This document shows positions 5,019 through 64,000 of a stretch of DNA of 64,000 nucleotides, one piece after another. The stretch lies in the sequence record LR745208.1; one strand, 5' to 3'. The position numbers and the translations under genes were made by a program. Under the pieces are notes generated by a model. It did no database searches. It had not been told where the DNA came from and saw only the letters and a list, made by a program, of their open reading frames with translations. The stretch's first letter is position 1. Each line of letters starts with the position of its first letter.

Positions 5019-5516
5019 GTGTCCACGGGGACATCGGCAGAACAAGCTCTAGCCCCATTTCGATCCGTCTTGAATGACCCCAACACCCCCCTGCCTGAAA
5101 AGATTCGGGTGGGGGCTGAGTTGTGGTTGTTGATTGACCTAGCCGAAAAAGTCTTGGGGCCGTTCAAGGAAGAGCTGAGATCAGCTGCCTTGGCCCAGCT
5201 TGGTGGGAAAAAGGACTCTGTGACCTTCGACGGGAATGGGTTTTCTCAAGCTCGGGTAACTGTGCCTGAGGAGATTGTCAAACTCGAACCTAAGGCACAG
5301 GCTGCCCTCAATTCCTTCCAGGGGCTGTCCCTTGAAATGGCAATCTTGGAAGATGTGTTCAACAGCATCTATAAGGTGGACTTGAGGTCCAATTCGGTAG
5401 CTGCCTTCAATGCACTCCCCGAGGATGCCAGACGGCACATGGCCCACAAGGTCAAGATTGACATGAATACCCCGAGAGTATCCCTGCAAACCTTCAATGG
5501 GGTCGACCCCCTGTGA
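5019..5516 (+). CDS. hypothetical protein
   Basis: 165 aa ORF in operon. Confidence 0.7.
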   Translation: MSTGTSAEQALAPFRSVLNDPNTPLPEKIRVGAELWLLIDLAEKVLGPFKEELRSAALAQLGGKKDSVTFDGNGFSQARVTVPEEIVKLEPKAQAALNSFQGLSLEMAILEDVFNSIYKVDLRSNSVAAFNALPEDARRHMAHKVKIDMNTPRVSLQTFNGVDPL

Positions 5517-5963
5517 GTGAACATGAAAGCATGGTGGTTACGTGACATACTACCTGGAGGCTTCAGCCCAGTTGGCCCCACAGAATCTGTCCCCCAAGCG
5601 AAAGCATCAGGGGGGTGACCTAATGGGATACAATATCTGGCAAACCGAGGCAGACTTCAAGATAACAGCTGAGCGCCAACACTGGCGGATGCGGTTCCGA
5701 GATGAGATGTGCCATGACAACGTGGATCTTCACACCCGTTCCTGCCAGGAATGAGTCGGATGTGTGTCCGACGTGTGGGGGAGACCTATCCACCAAACAT
5801 TCCACTCCATGCCCCCGCGGGGAAGGTGTAACCATGTGGGCGATTGTGGAGACGTTTGAGTTTGATGATGAGAACGAGTCCCCGTAGCTCAGATGGACAG
5901 AGCGGTGAATTCCTAATTTACAGGTCACACGTTCAATTCGTGTCGGGGACGCTAGGTGAAACA

Positions 5964-6386
5964 ATGAATGTCAAACAAGTAATCGTGATCCGTAAGGACA
6001 TCAAGATGAGGCGAGGGAAGGAGATTGCTCAGGGGAGCCATGGCAGCATGGCCTGGATGTCCGAAGTGATCCGAAACCACACGAGAGATCATCAGGACTC
6101 CTGTGTGGACTACTTGAGTAATGGGTACCAGCCAATCGACCTGACCCCGGAACAAAACGAGTGGCTCATCAACGGGCTGTTCACTAAGATTGTGACTCAG
6201 GTGGATTCAGAGGCAGAACTCATGTCCGTCTTCCAAGCCGCCACGGATGCAGGTCTCACAGTGCATTTGATCACCGATGCTGGTCTGACCGAGTTTAATG
6301 GGGTGCCTACCCGCACCTGTCTGGCAATTGGTCCCAACAAGTCTGAGGAAATCGACAAGATCACCGGGCACCTGAAGTTGTATTGA
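5964..6386 (+). CDS. pth2: peptidyl-tRNA hydrolase, Pth2 family
   Basis: KQVIVIRKD..GKEIAQGSH, KIV, DAGLTE, LAIGP..IDKITGHLKL. Confidence 0.92.
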   Translation: MNVKQVIVIRKDIKMRRGKEIAQGSHGSMAWMSEVIRNHTRDHQDSCVDYLSNGYQPIDLTPEQNEWLINGLFTKIVTQVDSEAELMSVFQAATDAGLTVHLITDAGLTEFNGVPTRTCLAIGPNKSEEIDKITGHLKLY

Positions 6387-6389
6387 CCA

Positions 6390-6695
6390 ATGTCCAACGT
6401 CATCAAGATAGCAGAATTCCAAACTCGTAAGGACCACCGCAATCGACGGGATAGGGCGCGGTGGGCCCACAAAAAGGCTTCCCTGAGGCCCTTGGAGCCA
6501 CCAGATCTGCCCGATACGAACCGGTGTCAGGCTTGGCACCAGGGCGGGCAATGCGCCCTGGATATTGGACATTACAGGCCCAACCTGGATTTGAACCCCT
6601 GTCCTCACATTTTGGAGAATGGGACGGAATGGTTTGGTGTTGGTGATTGGGCGTCAGTTGCATACTTGACCAGTGGCATACTTGACAGGATCTAG
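6390..6695 (+). CDS. hypothetical protein
   Basis: ORF in operon. Confidence 0.55.
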   Translation: MSNVIKIAEFQTRKDHRNRRDRARWAHKKASLRPLEPPDLPDTNRCQAWHQGGQCALDIGHYRPNLDLNPCPHILENGTEWFGVGDWASVAYLTSGILDRI

Positions 6696-6817
6696 ACCGT
6701 GCTTATCATGGGGGCCATGCACCACTAACTGCCGTACTGTCGTGGCCCCCCTCTAGCATTGGTCTGCCCAATTTCATCTCAAGTGAAGGTCAGTCGATGT
6801 AATCAAGGAACAAGGTC

Positions 6818-7222
6818 ATGAATCCAATCAAGTCACGGTTTCTCAAGTCCCCCAGCTACCGGGCCGTCCAGCTCGCCTACGCTTTCCTGCGTGAAACCCC
6901 CTACCGTAATGTGGAGGCGGTCACCGGCCAGGACAAGATGGACAAGGCCCCTCGGGAGTATGCCCGTAGCGTCCTCGCCTTGGATGTTGCCACCTACGTG
7001 CTGTGGCTCTCCGAAGAGGGTGCGATCGACCCCAAGAACACGTCCCCAGCCTGGGGTTACCGGGCTGCGGAGGCCAAAGCTTTGAAGCCCAGCATCCTGG
7101 AATGGATGCTTCTTCCCGAGACTCCTGAGCGGGCAGAGAAGCGACTGGGCATCTACAATGCCTACATGGCCCGTAAGAAGGAAGTGGCAGCCGCCCATAT
7201 GGCAGCCAGGAAGCTGTCGTGA
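6818..7222 (+). CDS. phage hypothetical protein
   Basis: R..QLAYAFLR..PY..VE. Confidence 0.75.
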   Translation: MNPIKSRFLKSPSYRAVQLAYAFLRETPYRNVEAVTGQDKMDKAPREYARSVLALDVATYVLWLSEEGAIDPKNTSPAWGYRAAEAKALKPSILEWMLLPETPERAEKRLGIYNAYMARKKEVAAAHMAARKLS

Positions 7223-7596
7223 AGGAACGGCTGTATCTGGTGGTCCGTTCGGATTTGCCACCTGGGCTCCAGATGTCTCAGGTGGTGCATGCCATGGTGG
7301 CGTTCGACCGTGCTCATCCGGGGGTCTCGGAGGCATGGCAGGACAGCTCCAACACCATCTCAATCCTGTCTGTCCCCAATGAGGGGGCCCTCAGGAAATT
7401 GGCAGATGAGATTGATTGTTGGGGGGATGCCCCTTGGGTACCTTTCTATGAACCGGACCTGGAGGGCAGCATGACGGCTCTGGCACTAGGACCAGGGTAC
7501 ACCTCCCAGCGTATGGTGCGAGGGCTGCTCCCTGCATTGGACCCCAAGGTGGCTTACTACGCAAGTGCAGAGTTCGACACCAATCCCCATCCCTGA
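7219..7596 (+). CDS. second, divergent Pth2-like protein
   Basis: LYLVVRSDL..G.QMSQVVHA, FYEPDL..MTALALGP. Confidence 0.75.
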   Translation: MKERLYLVVRSDLPPGLQMSQVVHAMVAFDRAHPGVSEAWQDSSNTISILSVPNEGALRKLADEIDCWGDAPWVPFYEPDLEGSMTALALGPGYTSQRMVRGLLPALDPKVAYYASAEFDTNPHP

Positions 7597-7628
7597 TCCA
7601 GCGGTATCGGTGTGGCCGATACCCCCAA

Positions 7629-7703
7629 GCCCCATTGAGACATAGCGGCCTAATGCTCTGAGCTTTAACCTCAGGATCGCGAGTTCAAATCTCGCATGGG
7701 GCA
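7629..7703 (+). tRNA. tRNA with UUA anticodon (putative ochre suppressor, Glu-like body)
   Basis: acceptor GCCCCAT/ATGGGGC, anticodon arm CTGAG-CTTTAAC-CTCAG, T arm GCGAG-TTCAAAT-CTCGC. Confidence 0.8.
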
Positions 7704-7727
7704 CCCGCCAAAGGTGTAACTACAATC

Positions 7728-8306
7728 ATGAACATGACCCCCAAAGAAAAGCAACAGGTCGCAGAGAGCGTGATGGTGCTGCGTGATGTTCTCAAGGGAT
7801 ATGACTCCTTGGTGGAGGACAAGCACAATCTCCTGGAAGGTATCAAGAAGATAGGGGATGCCCTGAATGTTTCCTGGGAGTGCATTCCAGGACAGTACAT
7901 AAAGTTTGCGAAAAATGGTGGCGGGATGGTCGCAATCATCCTGGAGATCCTCAAGGATGCCAGCCACAACACAAGCCTCAATAGTCATACCTTGGGGCAT
8001 GAGCGAGAAGCCCGTGAGAAGGGTGCCCCAATCACACCTTTGGAGGAGGCAAAGAAGCAGATCGCCTACCTGACTTCCAAGCTGGATGCTGCCAACAAGG
8101 AACTGGCCCAGCGTAAGGAAGACGCCACCGCATGGTGTCAGGTTGACGAGTCCAATCCAACGGAAGTAGCTCTACGGGATCTGGTATACGAATGGGCTCG
8201 AACGGAGACCCGGGGGACCACCCCGTTTCGGGAACTTCAAGGTTTAGTGCTAGCTGCCCTTGTGCATTCCCTGATTAGCCGGGAGAAGTCATGCGTGTCC
8301 TCCTGA
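7728..8306 (+). CDS. hypothetical protein
   Basis: 192 aa ORF. Confidence 0.65.
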   Translation: MNMTPKEKQQVAESVMVLRDVLKGYDSLVEDKHNLLEGIKKIGDALNVSWECIPGQYIKFAKNGGGMVAIILEILKDASHNTSLNSHTLGHEREAREKGAPITPLEEAKKQIAYLTSKLDAANKELAQRKEDATAWCQVDESNPTEVALRDLVYEWARTETRGTTPFRELQGLVLAALVHSLISREKSCVSS

Positions 8307-10113: not shown

Positions 10114-10320
10114 TTACGGACACACGATCTTGCTGTTGGCACGGACCCACTCACGGGCCTTGGTCTGGCTGGTGAACACAATGTGCTTGGGGGAACCATC
10201 CGGTAGGAACTCCCCAGGAATCACCACCTTGAAGGGGCGGCTGGGCTGGGCACTGAATTCGATGACTAGTGGGCTGCCCTGAACTTGCGTGATCCTGGTG
10301 TTGTATCGGTTGGTCGCCAT
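10114..10320 (-). CDS. small protein, paralog of 12998..13183
   Basis: MATNRYNTRITQVQG. Confidence 0.75.
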   Translation of the reverse strand: MATNRYNTRITQVQGSPLVIEFSAQPSRPFKVVIPGEFLPDGSPKHIVFTSQTKAREWVRANSKIVCP

Positions 10321-10395: not shown

Positions 10396-10632
10396 TCAAG
10401 ACAGGGCCACCATCACGGCTTCCCTGGCATCGTTGGACCCCCGGAAGGGGGCGCCGGGCTGGTCTCTACGACCCACAACCCGACCCGTCACAGTCATGGA
10501 GGTATCCCGGACCTCCACCCGGCCATCTGCCCGAAGGGAGACCCAGAAGTGCCGGTGACGCCCACGGGAAACGCTCACATGCACCGTCCCCGCAAGGTCC
10601 GTGCACGAATGATTTCGGGTCATTGTTTCCAT
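10396..10632 (-). CDS. hypothetical protein
   Basis: ATG after cassette. Confidence 0.65.
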   Translation of the reverse strand: METMTRNHSCTDLAGTVHVSVSRGRHRHFWVSLRADGRVEVRDTSMTVTGRVVGRRDQPGAPFRGSNDAREAVMVALS

Positions 10633-10638
10633 GGGCAT

Positions 10639-10684
10639 CCTCACAACCCTATCGGTACCAAGGGGTGACTTTTTAGTGAAATCG
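10639..10684 (-). promoter_or_regulatory. sigma28-type promoter cassette
   Basis: motif copy. Confidence 0.8.
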
Positions 10685-11117: not shown

Positions 11118-11163
11118 GGAATTTCCTAAAAGTCATCCCTCCCGTACCGATAGGGTTGTGAGG
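11118..11163 (+). promoter_or_regulatory. sigma28-type promoter cassette
   Basis: motif copy; heads 11164. Confidence 0.8.
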
Positions 11164-11301
11164 ATGCCCATGACCGTTGAAGAACTCGAAGCTATGGACC
11201 GTTCCTGGCCTTCCTGGATGCTAGGGGGGTTGGTCGGCCGGAGGTCCTGGCCCGGAGTCGGGCCCGAATGGCCGAGCTGGCTGAGCAGTTTCACCAGATG
11301 A
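11164..11301 (+). CDS. small hypothetical protein
   Basis: ATG after cassette. Confidence 0.55.
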   Translation: MPMTVEELEAMDRSWPSWMLGGLVGRRSWPGVGPEWPSWLSSFTR

Positions 11302-12997: not shown

Positions 12998-13183
12998 ATG
13001 GCGACCAACCAATACAACACCCGGATCACTCAGGTACAGGGCTCGGCGATCGTGATTGAGTTTTCTGGCCAGCCCTCGCACCCCTTCAAGGTGGAGATTG
13101 CGGGACAGCGTTGGGTCTTCAAGTCCCAGACCAGGGCCCGAGAGTTCGTTCACAGCCGAATGCCAGTGGGTTCAAACGAGTAG
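12998..13183 (+). CDS. small protein, paralog of 10114..10320
   Basis: MATNQYNTRITQVQG. Confidence 0.75.
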   Translation: MATNQYNTRITQVQGSAIVIEFSGQPSHPFKVEIAGQRWVFKSQTRAREFVHSRMPVGSNE

Positions 13184-27027: not shown

Positions 27028-27487
27028 GTATGCCCCAAAAGCATCTGCCCATGACAGGTTGGCCTACTTGACATGTACCGATAGTTGTCCAGCCCACGAC
27101 ACCGTGGTGCCAGCCAAGGAGGCTAAGGATCGGGCCCCCAACTGCCCCCTGTGCAACCAGCCCCGTGAGGTCTACCAACACCCCACCGTCAAGCCGTATG
27201 GACTCGCCATCTACCACGCCAAGTTGTTGTCCTTGCCCCCACACACCAACCCCATTGCCATTGTCCCCTTCTGTGGAACTGGCATTGAAGCCAAGGCACT
27301 CCTGGATGTTGGGTTCAGGGTCATCGCCATTGATATTGATCCCCGTCACGTTGCCATGACCCAGTACAGGCTAGGTGGGGTGGGGGTAACTGTTGTAGCC
27401 GTTGGGGATGCCCCTCCAGCCACCACCACCACCACCGAAGTCCCCGCCACTGACACCACATCTTTTGAAGACCTACTGGGACTCTAA
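26990..27487 (+). pseudogene. C-terminal fragment of a DNA methylase
   Basis: RFKYAPKAS, HPTVKP, PFCGTG, IAIDID. Confidence 0.65.
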
Positions 27488-27490
27488 CAC

Positions 27491-29038
27491 ATGACCAACA
27501 CCAACCTGACACCCCCCTCCGCCGCCCCAACCAAATACACCCTTCACCACGGGGACTGCTTGGATGTCCTCAAGTCCCTACCAGCCAATTCCGTGGACGC
27601 CATCGTTACGGATCCCCCGGCAGGGATCAACTTCATGGGCAAGGATTGGGATAAGGACAAGGGTGGGCGGGACAAGTGGGTTGCTTGGATGACCGAGATA
27701 TCTCGTGAATGCATCCGCGTCATCAAGCCCGGTGGCCATGCCCTCGTGTGGGCAATTGGTCGCACATCTCATTGGACCGGCTGGGCCTGGGAGGATGCTG
27801 GCTGGGAAGTACGCGAAAAAATTACGCATTTGAATGGGCAGGGATTTCCGAAATCGTTGGATGTCAGCAAGGCGTTGGACAAACAGGCCGGAGCCGAGAG
27901 GGAAGTGGTTGGGTCGAAGGTGGGGCAACCAGGATACTCTGTGGCTCCTGGAAAAGGGCGCAACACCCTCAACTCGGCGAACGATGGCAGCCTCAACAAT
28001 TCTGACGCCGAATGTCAGATCACAGCCCCCTCCACCGACGCCGCTAAGAAGTGGGACGGTTGGGGGACGGCACTGAAACCTTCTAGTGAAGACTGGTGGA
28101 TGTTCCGTAAGCCCCTTGAAGGCACCGTAGCAGCCAATGTATTGGCCCATGGAACCGGGGCGCTCAATATCGATGGGTGTAGAATTGGATGTGAGTCTCG
28201 CCCTATCAACAACTACTCAAGTGAGGGGGCTCAAGGCTGTATGTCCCATGGTGAGGGTAAGGGTCACTCAGGTAAGGAGTACACAACCACGACAGTGTCC
28301 CAGGGCAGGTGGCCCGCAAACGCCGTCCTCAGCCACAACGAGGATTGCGTCGAAGTAGGCACCAGGAAGGTCAAGACCGGTACTGCCACCTTCAAGAATA
28401 CAGATGCCGGGACCGTGCTGGACTCCTACAGTGGGGGGCTGAAACGCCAGGACCACGGTGAGTATGGCCACGCAGACCCCGATGGCACCGAAACCGTACC
28501 CGCCTGGGATTGCACCCCCGATTGCCCCGTACGGATGTTGGACGAACAGAGCCTTGCTGGAGGCATGCACAGTGCTGGAGCCGCCCGAGACAAAACAGTA
28601 ACCTCAACCTATGAAGCATCCTCCTATGACCTGTCTGGACCCAGACCCATGGGGAGGCTAGGGGACACAGGAGGAGCCAGTAGATTCTTCTACTGCGCCA
28701 AAGCCTCCAAAGGTGACCGGGGCGAGGGTAACAATCACCCCACCGTAAAATCACAATCTCTTATGGTTTGGCTTTGCAGGCTAATCTGCCCACCCGGTGG
28801 GACCATCCTGGATCCCTTCCTGGGCAGTGGTACCACCGGTATCGCCGCCCTACTTGAGGGGTTCCGGTTCATTGGCATCGAGAAGGAGCTACCCTACTTC
28901 GAGATCGCTAAGGGACGAATCGAAAACTACAACCAACCAAAGGCTGCCCCCAAGGCGGCAACTAAGGTGGAGGGGGCAACTGAGGGTAAGAACCCCACCA
29001 CACCCGATACAGGCTCCATCCTGGACATGTTCGGGTGA
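27491..29038 (+). CDS. DNA N6-adenine/N4-cytosine methyltransferase (beta class)
   Basis: VTDPP, HPTVKS, LDPFLGSGTT, IGIEKE. Confidence 0.92.
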   Translation: MTNTNLTPPSAAPTKYTLHHGDCLDVLKSLPANSVDAIVTDPPAGINFMGKDWDKDKGGRDKWVAWMTEISRECIRVIKPGGHALVWAIGRTSHWTGWAWEDAGWEVREKITHLNGQGFPKSLDVSKALDKQAGAEREVVGSKVGQPGYSVAPGKGRNTLNSANDGSLNNSDAECQITAPSTDAAKKWDGWGTALKPSSEDWWMFRKPLEGTVAANVLAHGTGALNIDGCRIGCESRPINNYSSEGAQGCMSHGEGKGHSGKEYTTTTVSQGRWPANAVLSHNEDCVEVGTRKVKTGTATFKNTDAGTVLDSYSGGLKRQDHGEYGHADPDGTETVPAWDCTPDCPVRMLDEQSLAGGMHSAGAARDKTVTSTYEASSYDLSGPRPMGRLGDTGGASRFFYCAKASKGDRGEGNNHPTVKSQSLMVWLCRLICPPGGTILDPFLGSGTTGIAALLEGFRFIGIEKELPYFEIAKGRIENYNQPKAAPKAATKVEGATEGKNPTTPDTGSILDMFG

Positions 29039-36273: not shown

Positions 36274-36408
36274 CAGTACAGTCCGGTGGGACTCGAACCC
36301 ACATCCACGGTTTACAAAGCCGCTGCTCTGCCTGCTGATCTACCTCAATGTAGGTTATCCTAGGTTCCTACACCCACTTCCACCAGCTGAGCTACTTGGA
36401 CTGTACTG
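36274..36408 (-). tRNA. tRNA-Thr(UGU)-like with 52 nt D-loop insertion
   Basis: TAGCTCAGCTGGT..AGAGC, arm GCGGC-TTTGTAA-ACCGT, T arm GTGGG-TTCGAGT-CCCAC. Confidence 0.65.
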
Positions 36409-36409
36409 A

Positions 36410-36612
36410 CTCGATGAAGAATCCCATGTGTGGCCAGGAATTGAACCCAGCTACGGTCAGTCCACACCGACCGTCCCCATCCAGGGGCTAGGGGGAATCG
36501 AACCCCTGCACATCCAACACACACATGAGACTCGGTCGCGGGCAGGGGAGCTGCACCCCTCTAGCTTCATCAGCACCCTTTCGGGCCCCAGAACTCCTGG
36601 GCGGTCCGCGTT
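36410..36612 (-). ncRNA. promoter-driven structured RNA with three T-loop-like hairpins
   Basis: GGTTCAATTCC, GGTTCGATTCC, AGGGG-TGCAGCT-CCCCT, GCCC-GAAA-GGGT. Confidence 0.6.
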
Positions 36613-63219: not shown

Positions 63220-63222
63220 GCC

Positions 63223-63471
63223 TTACTTACGCCCCGACACCCCAGAGTTGGGCCACGAATGCACCAAGCAGACCTGTTCCCAGCCCTTGCTCCTTGGGGG
63301 AGGGGCGTCACATTCGATGCAGTAGGGTTTGACCCGGCGTGACTCCGGTGGCCTATTGATGACCATACGTGTGGTGTCACGCTCTTTGGTTGCGGTTAGG
63401 GCCCTAACCTCGGTGGCAGACTCCTGGAGCAAGTCATTCAGGTCGTACCAGTCCCAACGGTCTATCACCAT
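63223..63471 (-). CDS. hypothetical protein
   Basis: ORF. Confidence 0.5.
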   Translation of the reverse strand: MVIDRWDWYDLNDLLQESATEVRALTATKERDTTRMVINRPPESRRVKPYCIECDAPPPRSKGWEQVCLVHSWPNSGVSGRK

Positions 63472-64000
63472 TCACCCCGCATGTATGCCTTCAGGTTCCA
63501 TTTGGTACCAAGAATGTGATCCGTTACAACTCCGTCCTGCATCCTGACTGTCCTTCTCTTATCCGCTTTGGATCCCGCCCCAACCTGTTGCTTACGGTCG
63601 GCTGCCCGGGTTGACGTGGCCTGGGTGTTCGCAGCCTCCCAGAGGCGTGCCCGTAGTAGGGACAGGGCAGATGCCAAGTTCTGCTTCTGGCTACGCTCGG
63701 TCTGGCATCGAACCATGAGCCCTGTAGGCAAATGTCTTACTTGTACGGCGCTATCAGTAGTGTTGACTCCTTGTCCGCCACATCCGCTCGCTCTCGTAGC
63801 TGCCCATTCAATATCCTGGGGCCGAATCACGAGTTGGGTCTCGTTCGGAGGTTCAAGGGTTGCCACCGTAATTGTGCTACTGTGGATTCTCCCATTGCTG
63901 GTCCGCTGCACCCTGTGGCCACCTGCCTCATTGGCGAAGGCATCCTTGGCGCCCTTCCCTGATACCTCTATGATGCACAGCCCTGGGGATTGCTCAATGA
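63465..64000 (-). CDS. class I peptide release factor (RF1-like), 5' end outside window
   Basis: EAGGHRVQR, GRIHSS, SGCGGQGVNTTDSAV, QTERSQ, VTDH. Confidence 0.88.
   Translation of the reverse strand, partial: IEQSPGLCIIEVSGKGAKDAFANEAGGHRVQRTSNGRIHSSTITVATLEPPNETQLVIRPQDIEWAATRASGCGGQGVNTTDSAVQVRHLPTGLMVRCQTERSQKQNLASALSLLRARLWEAANTQATSTRAADRKQQVGAGSKADKRRTVRMQDGVVTDHILGTKWNLKAYMRGEW

What the first reader, a model, noticed from the sequence alone, without database searches (positions are those of the whole stretch)
7629..7703. tRNA with UUA anticodon: putative ochre (and amber by wobble) suppressor
Seen: perfect 5 bp anticodon stem with loop CT-TTA-AC; D-loop AGCGGCCTA, 4 nt variable loop and loop context resemble tRNA-Glu (CTTTCAC), one base away; two extra nt between acceptor and D stem; 3' end ACCC, no exact CCA. 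Known: UUA reads UAA and by wobble UAG. TAA still ends ordinary genes here (24128, 24695, 46832), so this is not wholesale recoding. Inference: regulated read-through or a decoy.
Basis: partly seen in the sequence, partly recalled or inferred. Interest (0 to 1): 0.75.

Follow-up and report, generated by a model that had tools for sequence, protein, structure and literature searches.

The report
Odd stop-reading tRNA in huge phage
A 485-kb groundwater phage that uses the ordinary genetic code carries a real but misshapen tRNA gene whose anticodon matches the stop codon UAA; none of its genes needs it, so it is at most a weak read-through tRNA or a decaying copy, a kind of oddity already seen in other giant phages.

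Summary
ARAGORN calls tRNA-Stop(tta) at 7629-7705. Rfam's tRNA model matches 7631-7701 at 29.5 bits, just over its cut-off of 29. The acceptor, anticodon and T stems are perfect and the loop is CU-UUA-AC. Two extra bases sit at the acceptor/D-arm junction, and no CCA is encoded. The A at 7667 is identical in contigs assembled from at least eight different Rifle groundwater samples or runs, so it is not an assembly error.

The window is the start of LR745208.1, a curated 485,034-bp huge phage. Its authors' own file labels this tRNA "Pseudo". The genome uses the standard code: coding density is 0.905 and TAA ends 106 of 531 called genes. Treating TAA as sense gives no gain, and every in-frame TAA junction is followed by a start codon. 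The phage has 37 other tRNAs, including Lys, Gln, Glu and Tyr, so this one fills no gap. I found no orthologue anywhere.

My best reading, at about 0.4, is a weak, dispensable ochre suppressor. A relic tRNA is nearly as likely, at about 0.35.

It sits among translation-rescue genes: two PTH2 hydrolases, and 56 kb away a truncated RF1-like gene with a prfB-style +1 frameshift. That gene is more unusual than the tRNA. The tRNA is a new member of a known kind, of modest interest.

The parts
7629..7705 (+). tRNA-type gene with anticodon UUA (77 nt, no encoded CCA)
   Evidence: ARAGORN; Rfam RF00005 at 29.5 bits; cloverleaf minimum-energy fold, z = -3.1; authors' annotation 'tRNA 7629..7706 Pseudo'
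7629..7635 (+). acceptor stem, 5' strand GCCCCAU; pairs with 7696-7702
   Evidence: 7 of 7 Watson-Crick pairs, read from the sequence
7636..7656 (+). Irregular D arm, with two bases more than canonical. The connector is U8-G-A. The D stem is G11-C28, bulged A12, C13-G27, A14-U26, U15-A25. The D loop is AGCGGCCUA, with A14, G18, G19 and A21 equivalents present.
   Evidence: Rfam alignment can only absorb the extra bases by shifting the acceptor stem. Energies: bulged cloverleaf -22.8 to -24.1 kcal/mol against -27.4 for the minimum-energy fold with an alternative D hairpin. Alignment to Vibrio phage D69 tRNA-Asn places two 1-nt insertions here.
7658..7674 (+). Anticodon stem-loop CUGAG-CUUUAAC-CUCAG.
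   Evidence: 5 of 5 pairs, 7-nt loop with U33 and A37; identical in all assemblies
7675..7678 (+). variable loop GAUC (4 nt)
   Evidence: sequence
7679..7695 (+). T arm GCGAG-UUCAAAU-CUCGC
   Evidence: 5 of 5 pairs and a canonical T loop
7696..7705 (+). acceptor stem 3' strand AUGGGGC, discriminator A (7703), then CC (then C, G), so no CCA
   Evidence: Sequence. About half of this phage's other tRNAs also lack an encoded CCA.
7603..7623 (+). perfect 8-bp hairpin GGTATCGG-TGTGG-CCGATACC between the stop of the PTH2-like gene (7594-7596) and the tRNA; no T run follows; possible processing or structural element
   Evidence: read from the sequence; not called as a terminator
7219..7596 (+). context: PTH2-like gene (125 aa) ending 32 nt upstream of the tRNA
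   Evidence: Pfam PF01981 1.2e-5, phrog_1866 1.3e-15; 44% identical to the 'peptidyl tRNA hydrolase' of cluster-C mycobacteriophages
6682..6709 (+). context: sigma-70-like promoter match TTGACA-16-TATCAT (11 of 12) upstream of ORF 6818-7222, the PTH2-like gene and the tRNA; possible common transcript
   Evidence: a consensus match only
5964..6386 (+). context: peptidyl-tRNA hydrolase Pth2 (140 aa)
   Evidence: Pfam PF01981 2e-30; NCBIfam arch_pth2 93.8 bits, above its cut-off of 82
5878..5952 (+). context: tRNA-Arg(CCU), a second copy of an isoacceptor also found in the main tRNA cluster
   Evidence: ARAGORN; Rfam 59 bits

Best explanation
This is a genuine, fixed tRNA-type gene of a standard-code huge phage. 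Its anticodon UUA pairs with the stop codon UAA and, by U:G wobble, more weakly with UAG.

Inferred mechanism:
1. It is transcribed with the upstream PTH2-like operon.
2. It is trimmed, and host or phage enzymes add the CCA end.
3. It is charged by a host synthetase. LysRS is the best guess, because of A73, U34-U35 and an Asn/Asp/Lys-type body. GlnRS mischarging is the alternative.
4. It competes with RF1 and RF2 at UAA, giving low-level, untargeted read-through on host and phage messages alike.

It is not the decoder of a reassigned codon, and no phage gene depends on it. Any benefit would be auxiliary, such as disturbing host termination or buffering nonsense mutations.

Shown: the gene, its structure, its fixation in the population, and the standard code. 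Inferred: expression, charging, and any suppression.
For: - Two independent tools detect it, and the minimum-energy fold is a cloverleaf.
- All 17 pairs of the acceptor, anticodon and T stems are Watson-Crick. U8, A14, G18-G19, A21, U33, A37, G53-C61 and the T loop UUCAAAU are all present. Long neutral decay would not leave this pattern.
- It exactly fills a 131-bp intergenic gap in a genome with 0.905 coding density. It is co-oriented with translation genes, downstream of an 11-of-12 promoter match.
- It is identical in contigs from at least eight samples or runs.
- A low Rfam score does not disqualify it in this phage. Its tRNA-Tyr scores 23.3 bits, and its tRNA-Cys is not found at all at E<=10. 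Its tRNA-Lys(UUU) has a bulged anticodon stem.
- Lack of an encoded CCA is shared by about half of the phage's tRNAs.
- There is precedent: a tRNA-Sup-TTA was predicted in the standard-code jumbo phage phiKp24 (PMC8386662).
- From established genetics (own knowledge): E. coli ochre suppressors are weak and tolerated.
Against: - tRNAscan-SE, as used by the genome's authors, calls it 'Pseudo'. Its Rfam score is the lowest of the 34 phage tRNAs that reach the cut-off.
- The D arm carries two extra bases, giving either a 3-nt connector plus a bulged stem, or 8 unpaired bases in the minimum-energy fold. This could prevent L-shape folding, charging or EF-Tu binding.
- No ORF needs it. TAA ends 20% of phage genes and TAG 34%, so efficient suppression would extend or fuse many phage proteins.
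- TAA-ended genes show no extra back-up stops. The median distance to the next in-frame stop is 13 codons, against 14 after TGA.
- No orthologue exists in IMG/VR, JGI metagenomes, GTDB genomes or 50,697 phage records, so conservation or covariation cannot support it.
Confidence: 0.4

Rival explanations
1. It is a relic or pseudo-tRNA. A former sense tRNA of Asn/Asp/Lys-like build acquired insertions in the D arm and a changed anticodon loop. It is no longer charged or used, and it persists only because it is recent or harmless.
For: - The authors' tRNAscan-SE annotation says 'Pseudo'.
- The Rfam score of 29.5 bits is barely at the cut-off.
- Against its nearest relative, Vibrio phage D69 tRNA-Asn, it differs by two 1-nt insertions at the acceptor/D junction and a re-registered anticodon loop.
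- The phage already has a near-complete tRNA set, so nothing is lost.
- No gene needs UAA decoding.
- It lies outside the main tRNA clusters, which are at 140-201 kb.
- A second aberrant tRNA, Thr-like with an insertion of about 50 nt, lies in the same window.
Against: - Three stems are perfect and every conserved tertiary nucleotide is retained.
- Dense phage genomes tend to delete useless DNA.
- Other evidently needed tRNAs of this phage score even lower.
- tRNAscan-SE often flags divergent phage tRNAs as pseudogenes (own knowledge).
Confidence: 0.35
2. It is a non-decoding tRNA-like RNA. For example, it could be a decoy or sponge for a host tRNA-targeting defence nuclease that attacks U-rich anticodon loops (Lys, Gln or Glu type). 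It could also be a regulatory or processing element of the PTH2 operon.
For: - The loop CUUUAAC mimics the Lys, Gln and Glu loops at 6 of 7 positions.
- The phage invests heavily in tRNA-related counter-measures: 37 tRNAs, a Lys(UUU) tRNA with an altered anticodon stem, two Pth2 genes and an RF-like rescue-type factor.
- Phage tRNAs are known to evade or neutralise anticodon nucleases (PMC10264068 and PMC11555353, listed).
Against: There is no direct evidence. No defence nuclease or host is identified. Known cases work through resistant functional tRNAs, not decoys. A single-copy gene would be a poor sponge.
Confidence: 0.13
3. It serves programmed read-through or local recoding. One or a few phage genes would carry an in-frame TAA, or a functional C-terminal extension after TAA, that this tRNA decodes.
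For: - Eleven TAA-ended genes are followed in frame by a coding-like ORF.
- One junction (genome 458254) has no nearby ATG.
- The gene upstream of the RF1-like gene ends in TAA, in frame with it.
Against: - Every such junction has a start codon 0-6 codons after the TAA, as do the TAG and TGA junctions. 'Stop-NNN-ATG' is the house style of this genome.
- The 458254 pair is a full-length sliding clamp followed by a member of a stand-alone 211-aa ATPase family.
- Coding density does not rise with TAA read as sense: 0.899 against 0.905.
- No TAA-recoded phage was found among 10,754 jumbo genomes (PMC13037316).
Confidence: 0.05
4. It is an assembly or sequencing artefact. The true base at 7667 would be C or G, making an ordinary Glu or Gln tRNA.
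For: None.
Against: The sequence is identical in 10 further contigs from ENA, JGI and Logan assemblies of different samples and assemblers, plus the curated genome. The phage already has Glu(UUC, CUC) and Gln(UUG, CUG) tRNAs with unrelated bodies.
Confidence: 0.01

Closest known systems
Predicted tRNA-Sup(TTA) of standard-code jumbo phages, e.g. Klebsiella phage phiKp24 (PMC8386662)
   Same: It is a phage-encoded tRNA with anticodon UUA, in a large phage that uses the standard code and carries many tRNAs. Its function is unknown and untested.
   Different: There is no sequence similarity: a blastn search of 50,697 phage records found no related Sup tRNA. The present one has an irregular D arm and was labelled a pseudogene by its authors.
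Suppressor tRNAs of stop-codon-recoded phages (Lak, crAss-like and 'gemstone' clades; TAG or TGA reassigned)
   Same: It is a phage tRNA whose anticodon matches a stop codon, in a genome that also encodes a release-factor homologue.
   Different: Those genomes have low code-11 coding density and many in-frame TAG or TGA codons. Here density is 0.905 and there is no in-frame TAA. TAA reassignment has not been found in phage surveys.
Laboratory ochre suppressors of E. coli (supG/supL Lys, supB Gln, supC Tyr; anticodon UUA)
   Same: It has the same anticodon and the same expected decoding: UAA strongly, UAG by wobble. The same weak efficiency is expected because both RF1 and RF2 compete. A73 and U34-U35 fit the Lys type.
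   Different: Those are single-base anticodon mutants of normal host tRNAs. This one is not a one-step mutant of any tRNA in its own genome and has a non-canonical D arm.
Phage tRNA-Asn/Asp of the 'CAUAGCGGCCUAAUG' D-arm type (Vibrio phage D69 tRNA-Asn and IMG/VR Asp/Asn tRNAs)
   Same: It shares 61 of 77 bases with the D69 tRNA-Asn. The D arm, T loop and variable loop are identical and the acceptor stem is similar.
   Different: The anticodon loop is CUUUAAC rather than CUGUUAA. The discriminator is A rather than G. There are two extra bases 5' of and inside the D stem.

Membership tests
tRNA (Rfam RF00005) | Score at or above the family's gathering threshold | tested here: met
   29.5 bits against 29, which is marginal. 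ARAGORN also calls it.
tRNA (Rfam RF00005) | 7-bp acceptor stem, 5-bp anticodon stem with a 7-nt loop (U33, purine 37), and 5-bp T stem with a T-psi-C loop | tested here: met
   All 17 pairs are Watson-Crick. The loops are CUUUAAC and UUCAAAU.
tRNA (Rfam RF00005) | Canonical D arm: a 2-nt connector (8, 9) and a 3-4 bp uninterrupted D stem | tested here: not met
   There are two extra bases. This gives either a 3-nt connector plus a bulged A in the stem, or 8 unpaired bases in the minimum-energy fold.
tRNA (Rfam RF00005) | Passes the tRNAscan-SE pseudogene filter | not testable with these tools
   tRNAscan-SE is not available here. The genome authors' tRNAscan-SE 2.0 annotation reads 'Pseudo'.
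Nonsense (ochre) suppressor tRNA | Anticodon complementary to a stop codon in a regular anticodon loop | tested here: met
   UUA at 7665-7667, flanked by U33 and A37.
Nonsense (ochre) suppressor tRNA | Is aminoacylated and inserts an amino acid at UAA/UAG | not testable with these tools
   This needs expression and reporter assays. Identity elements only hint at Lys (A73, U34, U35).
Stop-codon-reassigned (alternatively coded) phage | Low coding density under code 11 that rises when the stop is read as sense | tested here: not met
   Density is 0.905 under the standard code and 0.899 with TAA as sense.
Stop-codon-reassigned (alternatively coded) phage | In-frame occurrences of the stop codon inside conserved genes | tested here: not met
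   All in-frame TAA junctions are gene boundaries with their own start codons. The only ambiguous pair is two complete proteins.
Orthologous family of phage tRNA-Sup(UUA) | Related copies in other genomes keeping the anticodon, with covarying stems | tested here: not met
   Only the same phage population was found in IMG/VR, JGI metagenomes, GTDB genomes, INPHARED phages and the 15-billion-protein context look-ups.

The most novel reading that the evidence does not exclude
The UUA tRNA would be one arm of a phage-encoded module that reprograms termination. The tRNA would weaken UAA termination during infection. Alongside it, the phage makes two Pth2 hydrolases and an RF1 paralogue that lacks domain 1 and the PxT stop-recognition loop, and whose synthesis depends on a UGA-sensing +1 frameshift. 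Together these would shut down or mis-terminate host translation, or rescue ribosomes stalled by host tRNA-targeting defences. Phage genes would be buffered by their preference for UGA and UAG stops.
Probability: 0.08. Interest if true: 0.8.

Novelty: new member of a known kind. Interest (0 to 1): 0.35.

Why it matters
If the RNA is charged and active, it would be a natural ochre suppressor carried by a virus that does not need it for its own reading frames. That points to deliberate manipulation of host termination, or to an early step toward TAA reassignment, which has never been seen in phages. It would also be an unusual tRNA scaffold, with an extra base in the connector and a bulged D stem, of possible use for orthogonal translation.

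If it is inactive, it is a caution. Stop-anticodon tRNAs in metagenomic phages cannot be read as evidence of recoding without checking coding density and in-frame stops.

Tried and rejected
1. Orthologue searches all returned only the same phage population, so no covariation test was possible. I tried an exact 38-mer and loop-only degenerate patterns in IMG/VR, JGI metagenomes and GTDB genomes. I ran blastn with word size 11 against 50,697 phage records. I ran neighbour-protein searches with the search for related loci and the search for homologous proteins.

2. The variant contigs L020 and L021 stop 25 nt after the PTH2-like gene. This looked like a break at the tRNA. It is only the k=127 end of a de Bruijn bubble after the last SNP at 7494.

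3. The D-arm motif cannot serve as an isotype marker. It occurs in Asp, Asn, Met, Pro and Cys tRNAs.

4. The tRNA is not a recent duplicate of one of the phage's own tRNAs. The best internal match is 48-53 of 77 bases.

5. ARAGORN's 'tRNA-??? (ttta)' looked like a possible sister oddity. Rfam alignment shows it is tRNA-Lys(UUU) with a bulged U in the anticodon stem. The apparently missing Asn tRNA exists at L003 42196.

6. TAA recoding or read-through is rejected on coding densities, extension lengths, a codon-usage score of extensions, and inspection of junctions.

7. TAG read-through by wobble looked possible, because TAG has more long in-frame neighbours. These also carry their own ATG 0-6 codons downstream.

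8. Only 2 of 38 genes in the first 25 kb end in TAA, a nominal p of about 0.01. This is not significant over 20 bins.

9. A regex scan for full-length RF1 or RF2 via the GGQ motif found only the truncated RF1-like gene.

Full report
**Where the window comes from.** The window is bases 1-64000 of LR745208.1, an unannotated 'uncultured phage' record of 485,034 bp (100% identity). Table S1 of Al-Shayeb et al. 2020 (PMC7162821) lists a genome of exactly this length. It is GWB1_PHAGE_COMPLETE_CIR-CU-CL_55_23, circular and manually curated, from Rifle (Colorado) groundwater. I fetched the whole genome in ten pieces and confirmed that the first 64 kb equal the window and that there are no Ns.

**The observation.**
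- ARAGORN finds two tRNAs in the window: tRNA-Arg(CCU) at 5878-5952 and 'tRNA-Stop (tta)' at 7629-7705.
- Rfam's tRNA model matches 7631-7701 at 29.5 bits, just above its gathering score of 29.
- The RNA's minimum-energy fold is a cloverleaf at -27.4 kcal/mol, z = -3.1.
- Read directly, the acceptor (7 bp), anticodon (5 bp) and T (5 bp) stems are all perfect Watson-Crick helices.
- The anticodon loop is C-U-UUA-A-C with U33 and A37. The T loop is UUCAAAU. The variable loop is GAUC. The discriminator is A, and no CCA is encoded.
- U8, A14, G18-G19, A21 and G53-C61 are in place.

Alignment with the nearest relative, a Vibrio phage tRNA-Asn, places them as one extra G after U8 and one bulged A inside the D stem. 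Rfam can only absorb them by mis-registering the acceptor stem. A bulged-stem cloverleaf costs 3-4.6 kcal/mol more than the minimum-energy fold, which instead forms an alternative D hairpin.

**Is base 7667 real?** Position 7667 is A36 of the anticodon. The protein encoded just downstream (7728-8306) is found on 24 contigs. The ten loci returned come from ENA, JGI and Logan assemblies of at least eight different samples or runs, made with different assemblers. All carry the tRNA and the whole intergenic region without a single difference. This holds even in strain variants that differ elsewhere, such as a hypervariable patch at 7214-7494 and an indel near 5611-5705. An artefact is excluded. 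Selection cannot be inferred, because population diversity is low.

**Which genetic code does the phage use?**
- A greedy ORF call gives 531 genes, coding density 0.905 and mean length 276 aa under the standard code. Stops are TGA 242, TAG 183 and TAA 106.
- Reading TAA as sense does not raise density (0.899).
- After TAA the next in-frame stop lies a median of 13 codons away, against 14 after TGA. There is no sign of extra back-up stops or of coding extensions.
- A codon-usage score shows that nearly every coding-like extension after a stop is simply the next gene in the same frame.
- Inspection of all such junctions shows a start codon 0-6 codons after the stop for TAA, TAG and TGA alike. 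'Stop-NNN-ATG' is a house style of this genome.
- The single TAA junction without a nearby ATG (genome 458254) separates a full-length sliding clamp from a member of a stand-alone 211-aa ATPase family.

So TAA is a stop codon throughout and no gene needs this tRNA. This agrees with surveys that found TAG and TGA recoding in phages but never TAA.

**The phage's other tRNAs.** ARAGORN and Rfam together find 37 more, nearly all in clusters at 140-201 kb. They cover Lys (UUU, CUU), Gln (UUG, CUG), Glu (UUC, CUC), Tyr, Leu(UAA), Ser(UGA) and Asn. Every family from which a UUA anticodon could arise by one change is therefore already present, and the stop-anticodon tRNA fills no gap. It is not a recent copy of any of them, since the best match is 48-53 of 77 bases. 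ARAGORN's puzzling 'ttta' tRNA is tRNA-Lys(UUU) with a bulged U in its anticodon stem.

The Rfam scores of the others range from 36 to 69 bits. However, the phage's tRNA-Tyr reaches only 23.3 bits and its tRNA-Cys is not detected at all. A low score is therefore a weak argument in this genome.

The loop is just as close to the phage's own Gln(UUG) loop. The D-arm motif occurs in Asp, Asn, Met, Pro and Cys tRNAs of phages and bacteria. The closest full-length relative is tRNA-Asn(GUU) of Vibrio phage D69, at 61 of 77 bases. The body is of an Asn/Asp-like kind, the discriminator is A73 and the first two anticodon bases are U34-U35. From the known identity rules of E. coli synthetases (my knowledge, not tested here), LysRS is the most plausible charging enzyme and GlnRS is a common mischarger. 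This remains a guess.

**Relatives elsewhere.** There are none. Exact and degenerate DNA patterns, blastn and neighbour-protein searches in IMG/VR, JGI metagenomes, GTDB genomes, the INPHARED phages and the large protein collection all returned only this phage population. No covariation or conservation argument is therefore possible.

**Prior annotation and precedent.** The authors' own GenBank file, made with tRNAscan-SE 2.0, lists 'tRNA 7629..7706, product Pseudo'. A predicted tRNA-Sup-TTA has been noted, also untested, in the standard-code jumbo Klebsiella phage phiKp24 (PMC8386662). Borges et al. tabulated TAA-suppressor tRNAs across phage codes. The kind of object is thus known.

**Surroundings.** The tRNA lies 32 nt after a PTH2-like gene (7219-7596). 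A perfect 8-bp hairpin (7603-7623) sits between them. Upstream are an ORF of unknown function, an 11-of-12 sigma-70-like promoter match (6682-6709), a bona fide Pth2 peptidyl-tRNA hydrolase (5964-6386) and tRNA-Arg(CCU). The PTH2-like protein's nearest phage relatives are the 'peptidyl tRNA hydrolase' genes of tRNA-rich cluster-C mycobacteriophages.

**Verdict on mechanism.** The intact helices and conserved nucleotides, the tight fit in a dense genome and the translation-gene neighbourhood favour a gene that is, or very recently was, a working tRNA. The irregular D arm, the pseudogene call, the absence of any dependent ORF and the absence of orthologues favour a relic. I put a weak, dispensable ochre suppressor at about 0.4 and a relic at about 0.35. 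A non-decoding role such as a nuclease decoy gets about 0.13, targeted read-through about 0.05 and an artefact about 0.01. An efficient suppressor is unlikely. It would extend or fuse the products of 20% of phage genes, or 54% if UAG is also read.

**Side finding.** At the window's end on the minus strand (genome 64122-63465) is a release-factor gene in two frames. A 37-codon piece ends in ...GGAGGGG-U-CUU-UGA-C, which is the prfB frameshift signal. The +1 frame continues for 181 codons with the GGQ motif.
- The pieces match consecutive parts of the PCRF domain, followed by the RF-1 domain.
- The best family is RF1, not RF2 or PrfH, and it scores far below the RF1 cut-off.
- Domain 1 is absent.
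- Alignment to solved RF1 structures shows a 4-residue deletion exactly at the PxT stop-recognition loop.
- The sequence is identical in three independent assemblies.

This gene, the two Pth2 genes and the tRNA could form a termination or ribosome-rescue toolkit. That is the most novel reading the evidence allows, and it is speculative.

Noticed in passing
window 63465-64000 minus strand, continuing to genome 64122 (L002 13465-14122): RF1-like release-factor gene split by a prfB-style programmed +1 frameshift (SD-like GGAGGGG, then CUU UGA C). It lacks domain 1 and has a 4-residue deletion exactly at the PxT stop-codon-recognition loop, while GGQ is intact. The frameshift sits in domain 2, not at the N-terminal position used by bacterial prfB. 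The sequence is identical in three independent assemblies.
   Followed up: partly
window 36285-36400 minus strand: tRNA-Thr(UGU)-like gene (Rfam 35.6 bits, model positions 7-64), missed by ARAGORN. The acceptor halves ACAGUCC and GGACUGU are present, but an insertion of about 50 nt sits in the D-arm region, leaving two D-arm-like 5' segments. It may be an intron-like insert or a damaged tRNA.
   Followed up: partly
window 36430-36510 minus strand: Two further isolated T-arm-like hairpins (GGGGUUCGAUUCCCC and GCUGGGUUCAAUUCCUGGCC) lie just upstream of the Thr-like tRNA. They have no full tRNA around them.
   Followed up: no
L003 42332-42403 (genome 142332-142403): The phage's tRNA-Lys(UUU) has a bulged U in the anticodon stem, so ARAGORN misreads it as a 4-base 'ttta' anticodon. 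It might be an anticodon-nuclease evasion variant.
   Followed up: partly
window 5964-6386 and 7219-7596: There are two PTH2-family peptidyl-tRNA hydrolase genes within 1.6 kb, one canonical and one divergent. The divergent one carries a hypervariable patch in the population: 34 SNPs in 280 nt at 7214-7494, in contigs L020, L021 and L027.
   Followed up: partly
whole genome; e.g. window 27485-27493 and 63220-63225: In-frame neighbouring genes are very often joined as stop-NNN-ATG, or stop directly followed by ATG. This suggests widespread termination-reinitiation coupling. TAG is unusually common as a stop (34%) for a genome of 57% GC.
   Followed up: no
window 5303-5705: Strain variants (L025, L027) carry about 600 nt of extra sequence with two small ORFs just upstream of tRNA-Arg(CCU), so this region is an indel hotspot.
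   Followed up: no
window 10114-10320 and 12998-13183: The authors' annotation shows two small paralogous ORFs (MATNRYNTRITQVQGS... and MATNQYNTRITQVQGS...) on opposite strands about 3 kb apart. This matches the 54-nt inverted similarity seen by blastn at 10630-10682 and 11121-11172.
   Followed up: no
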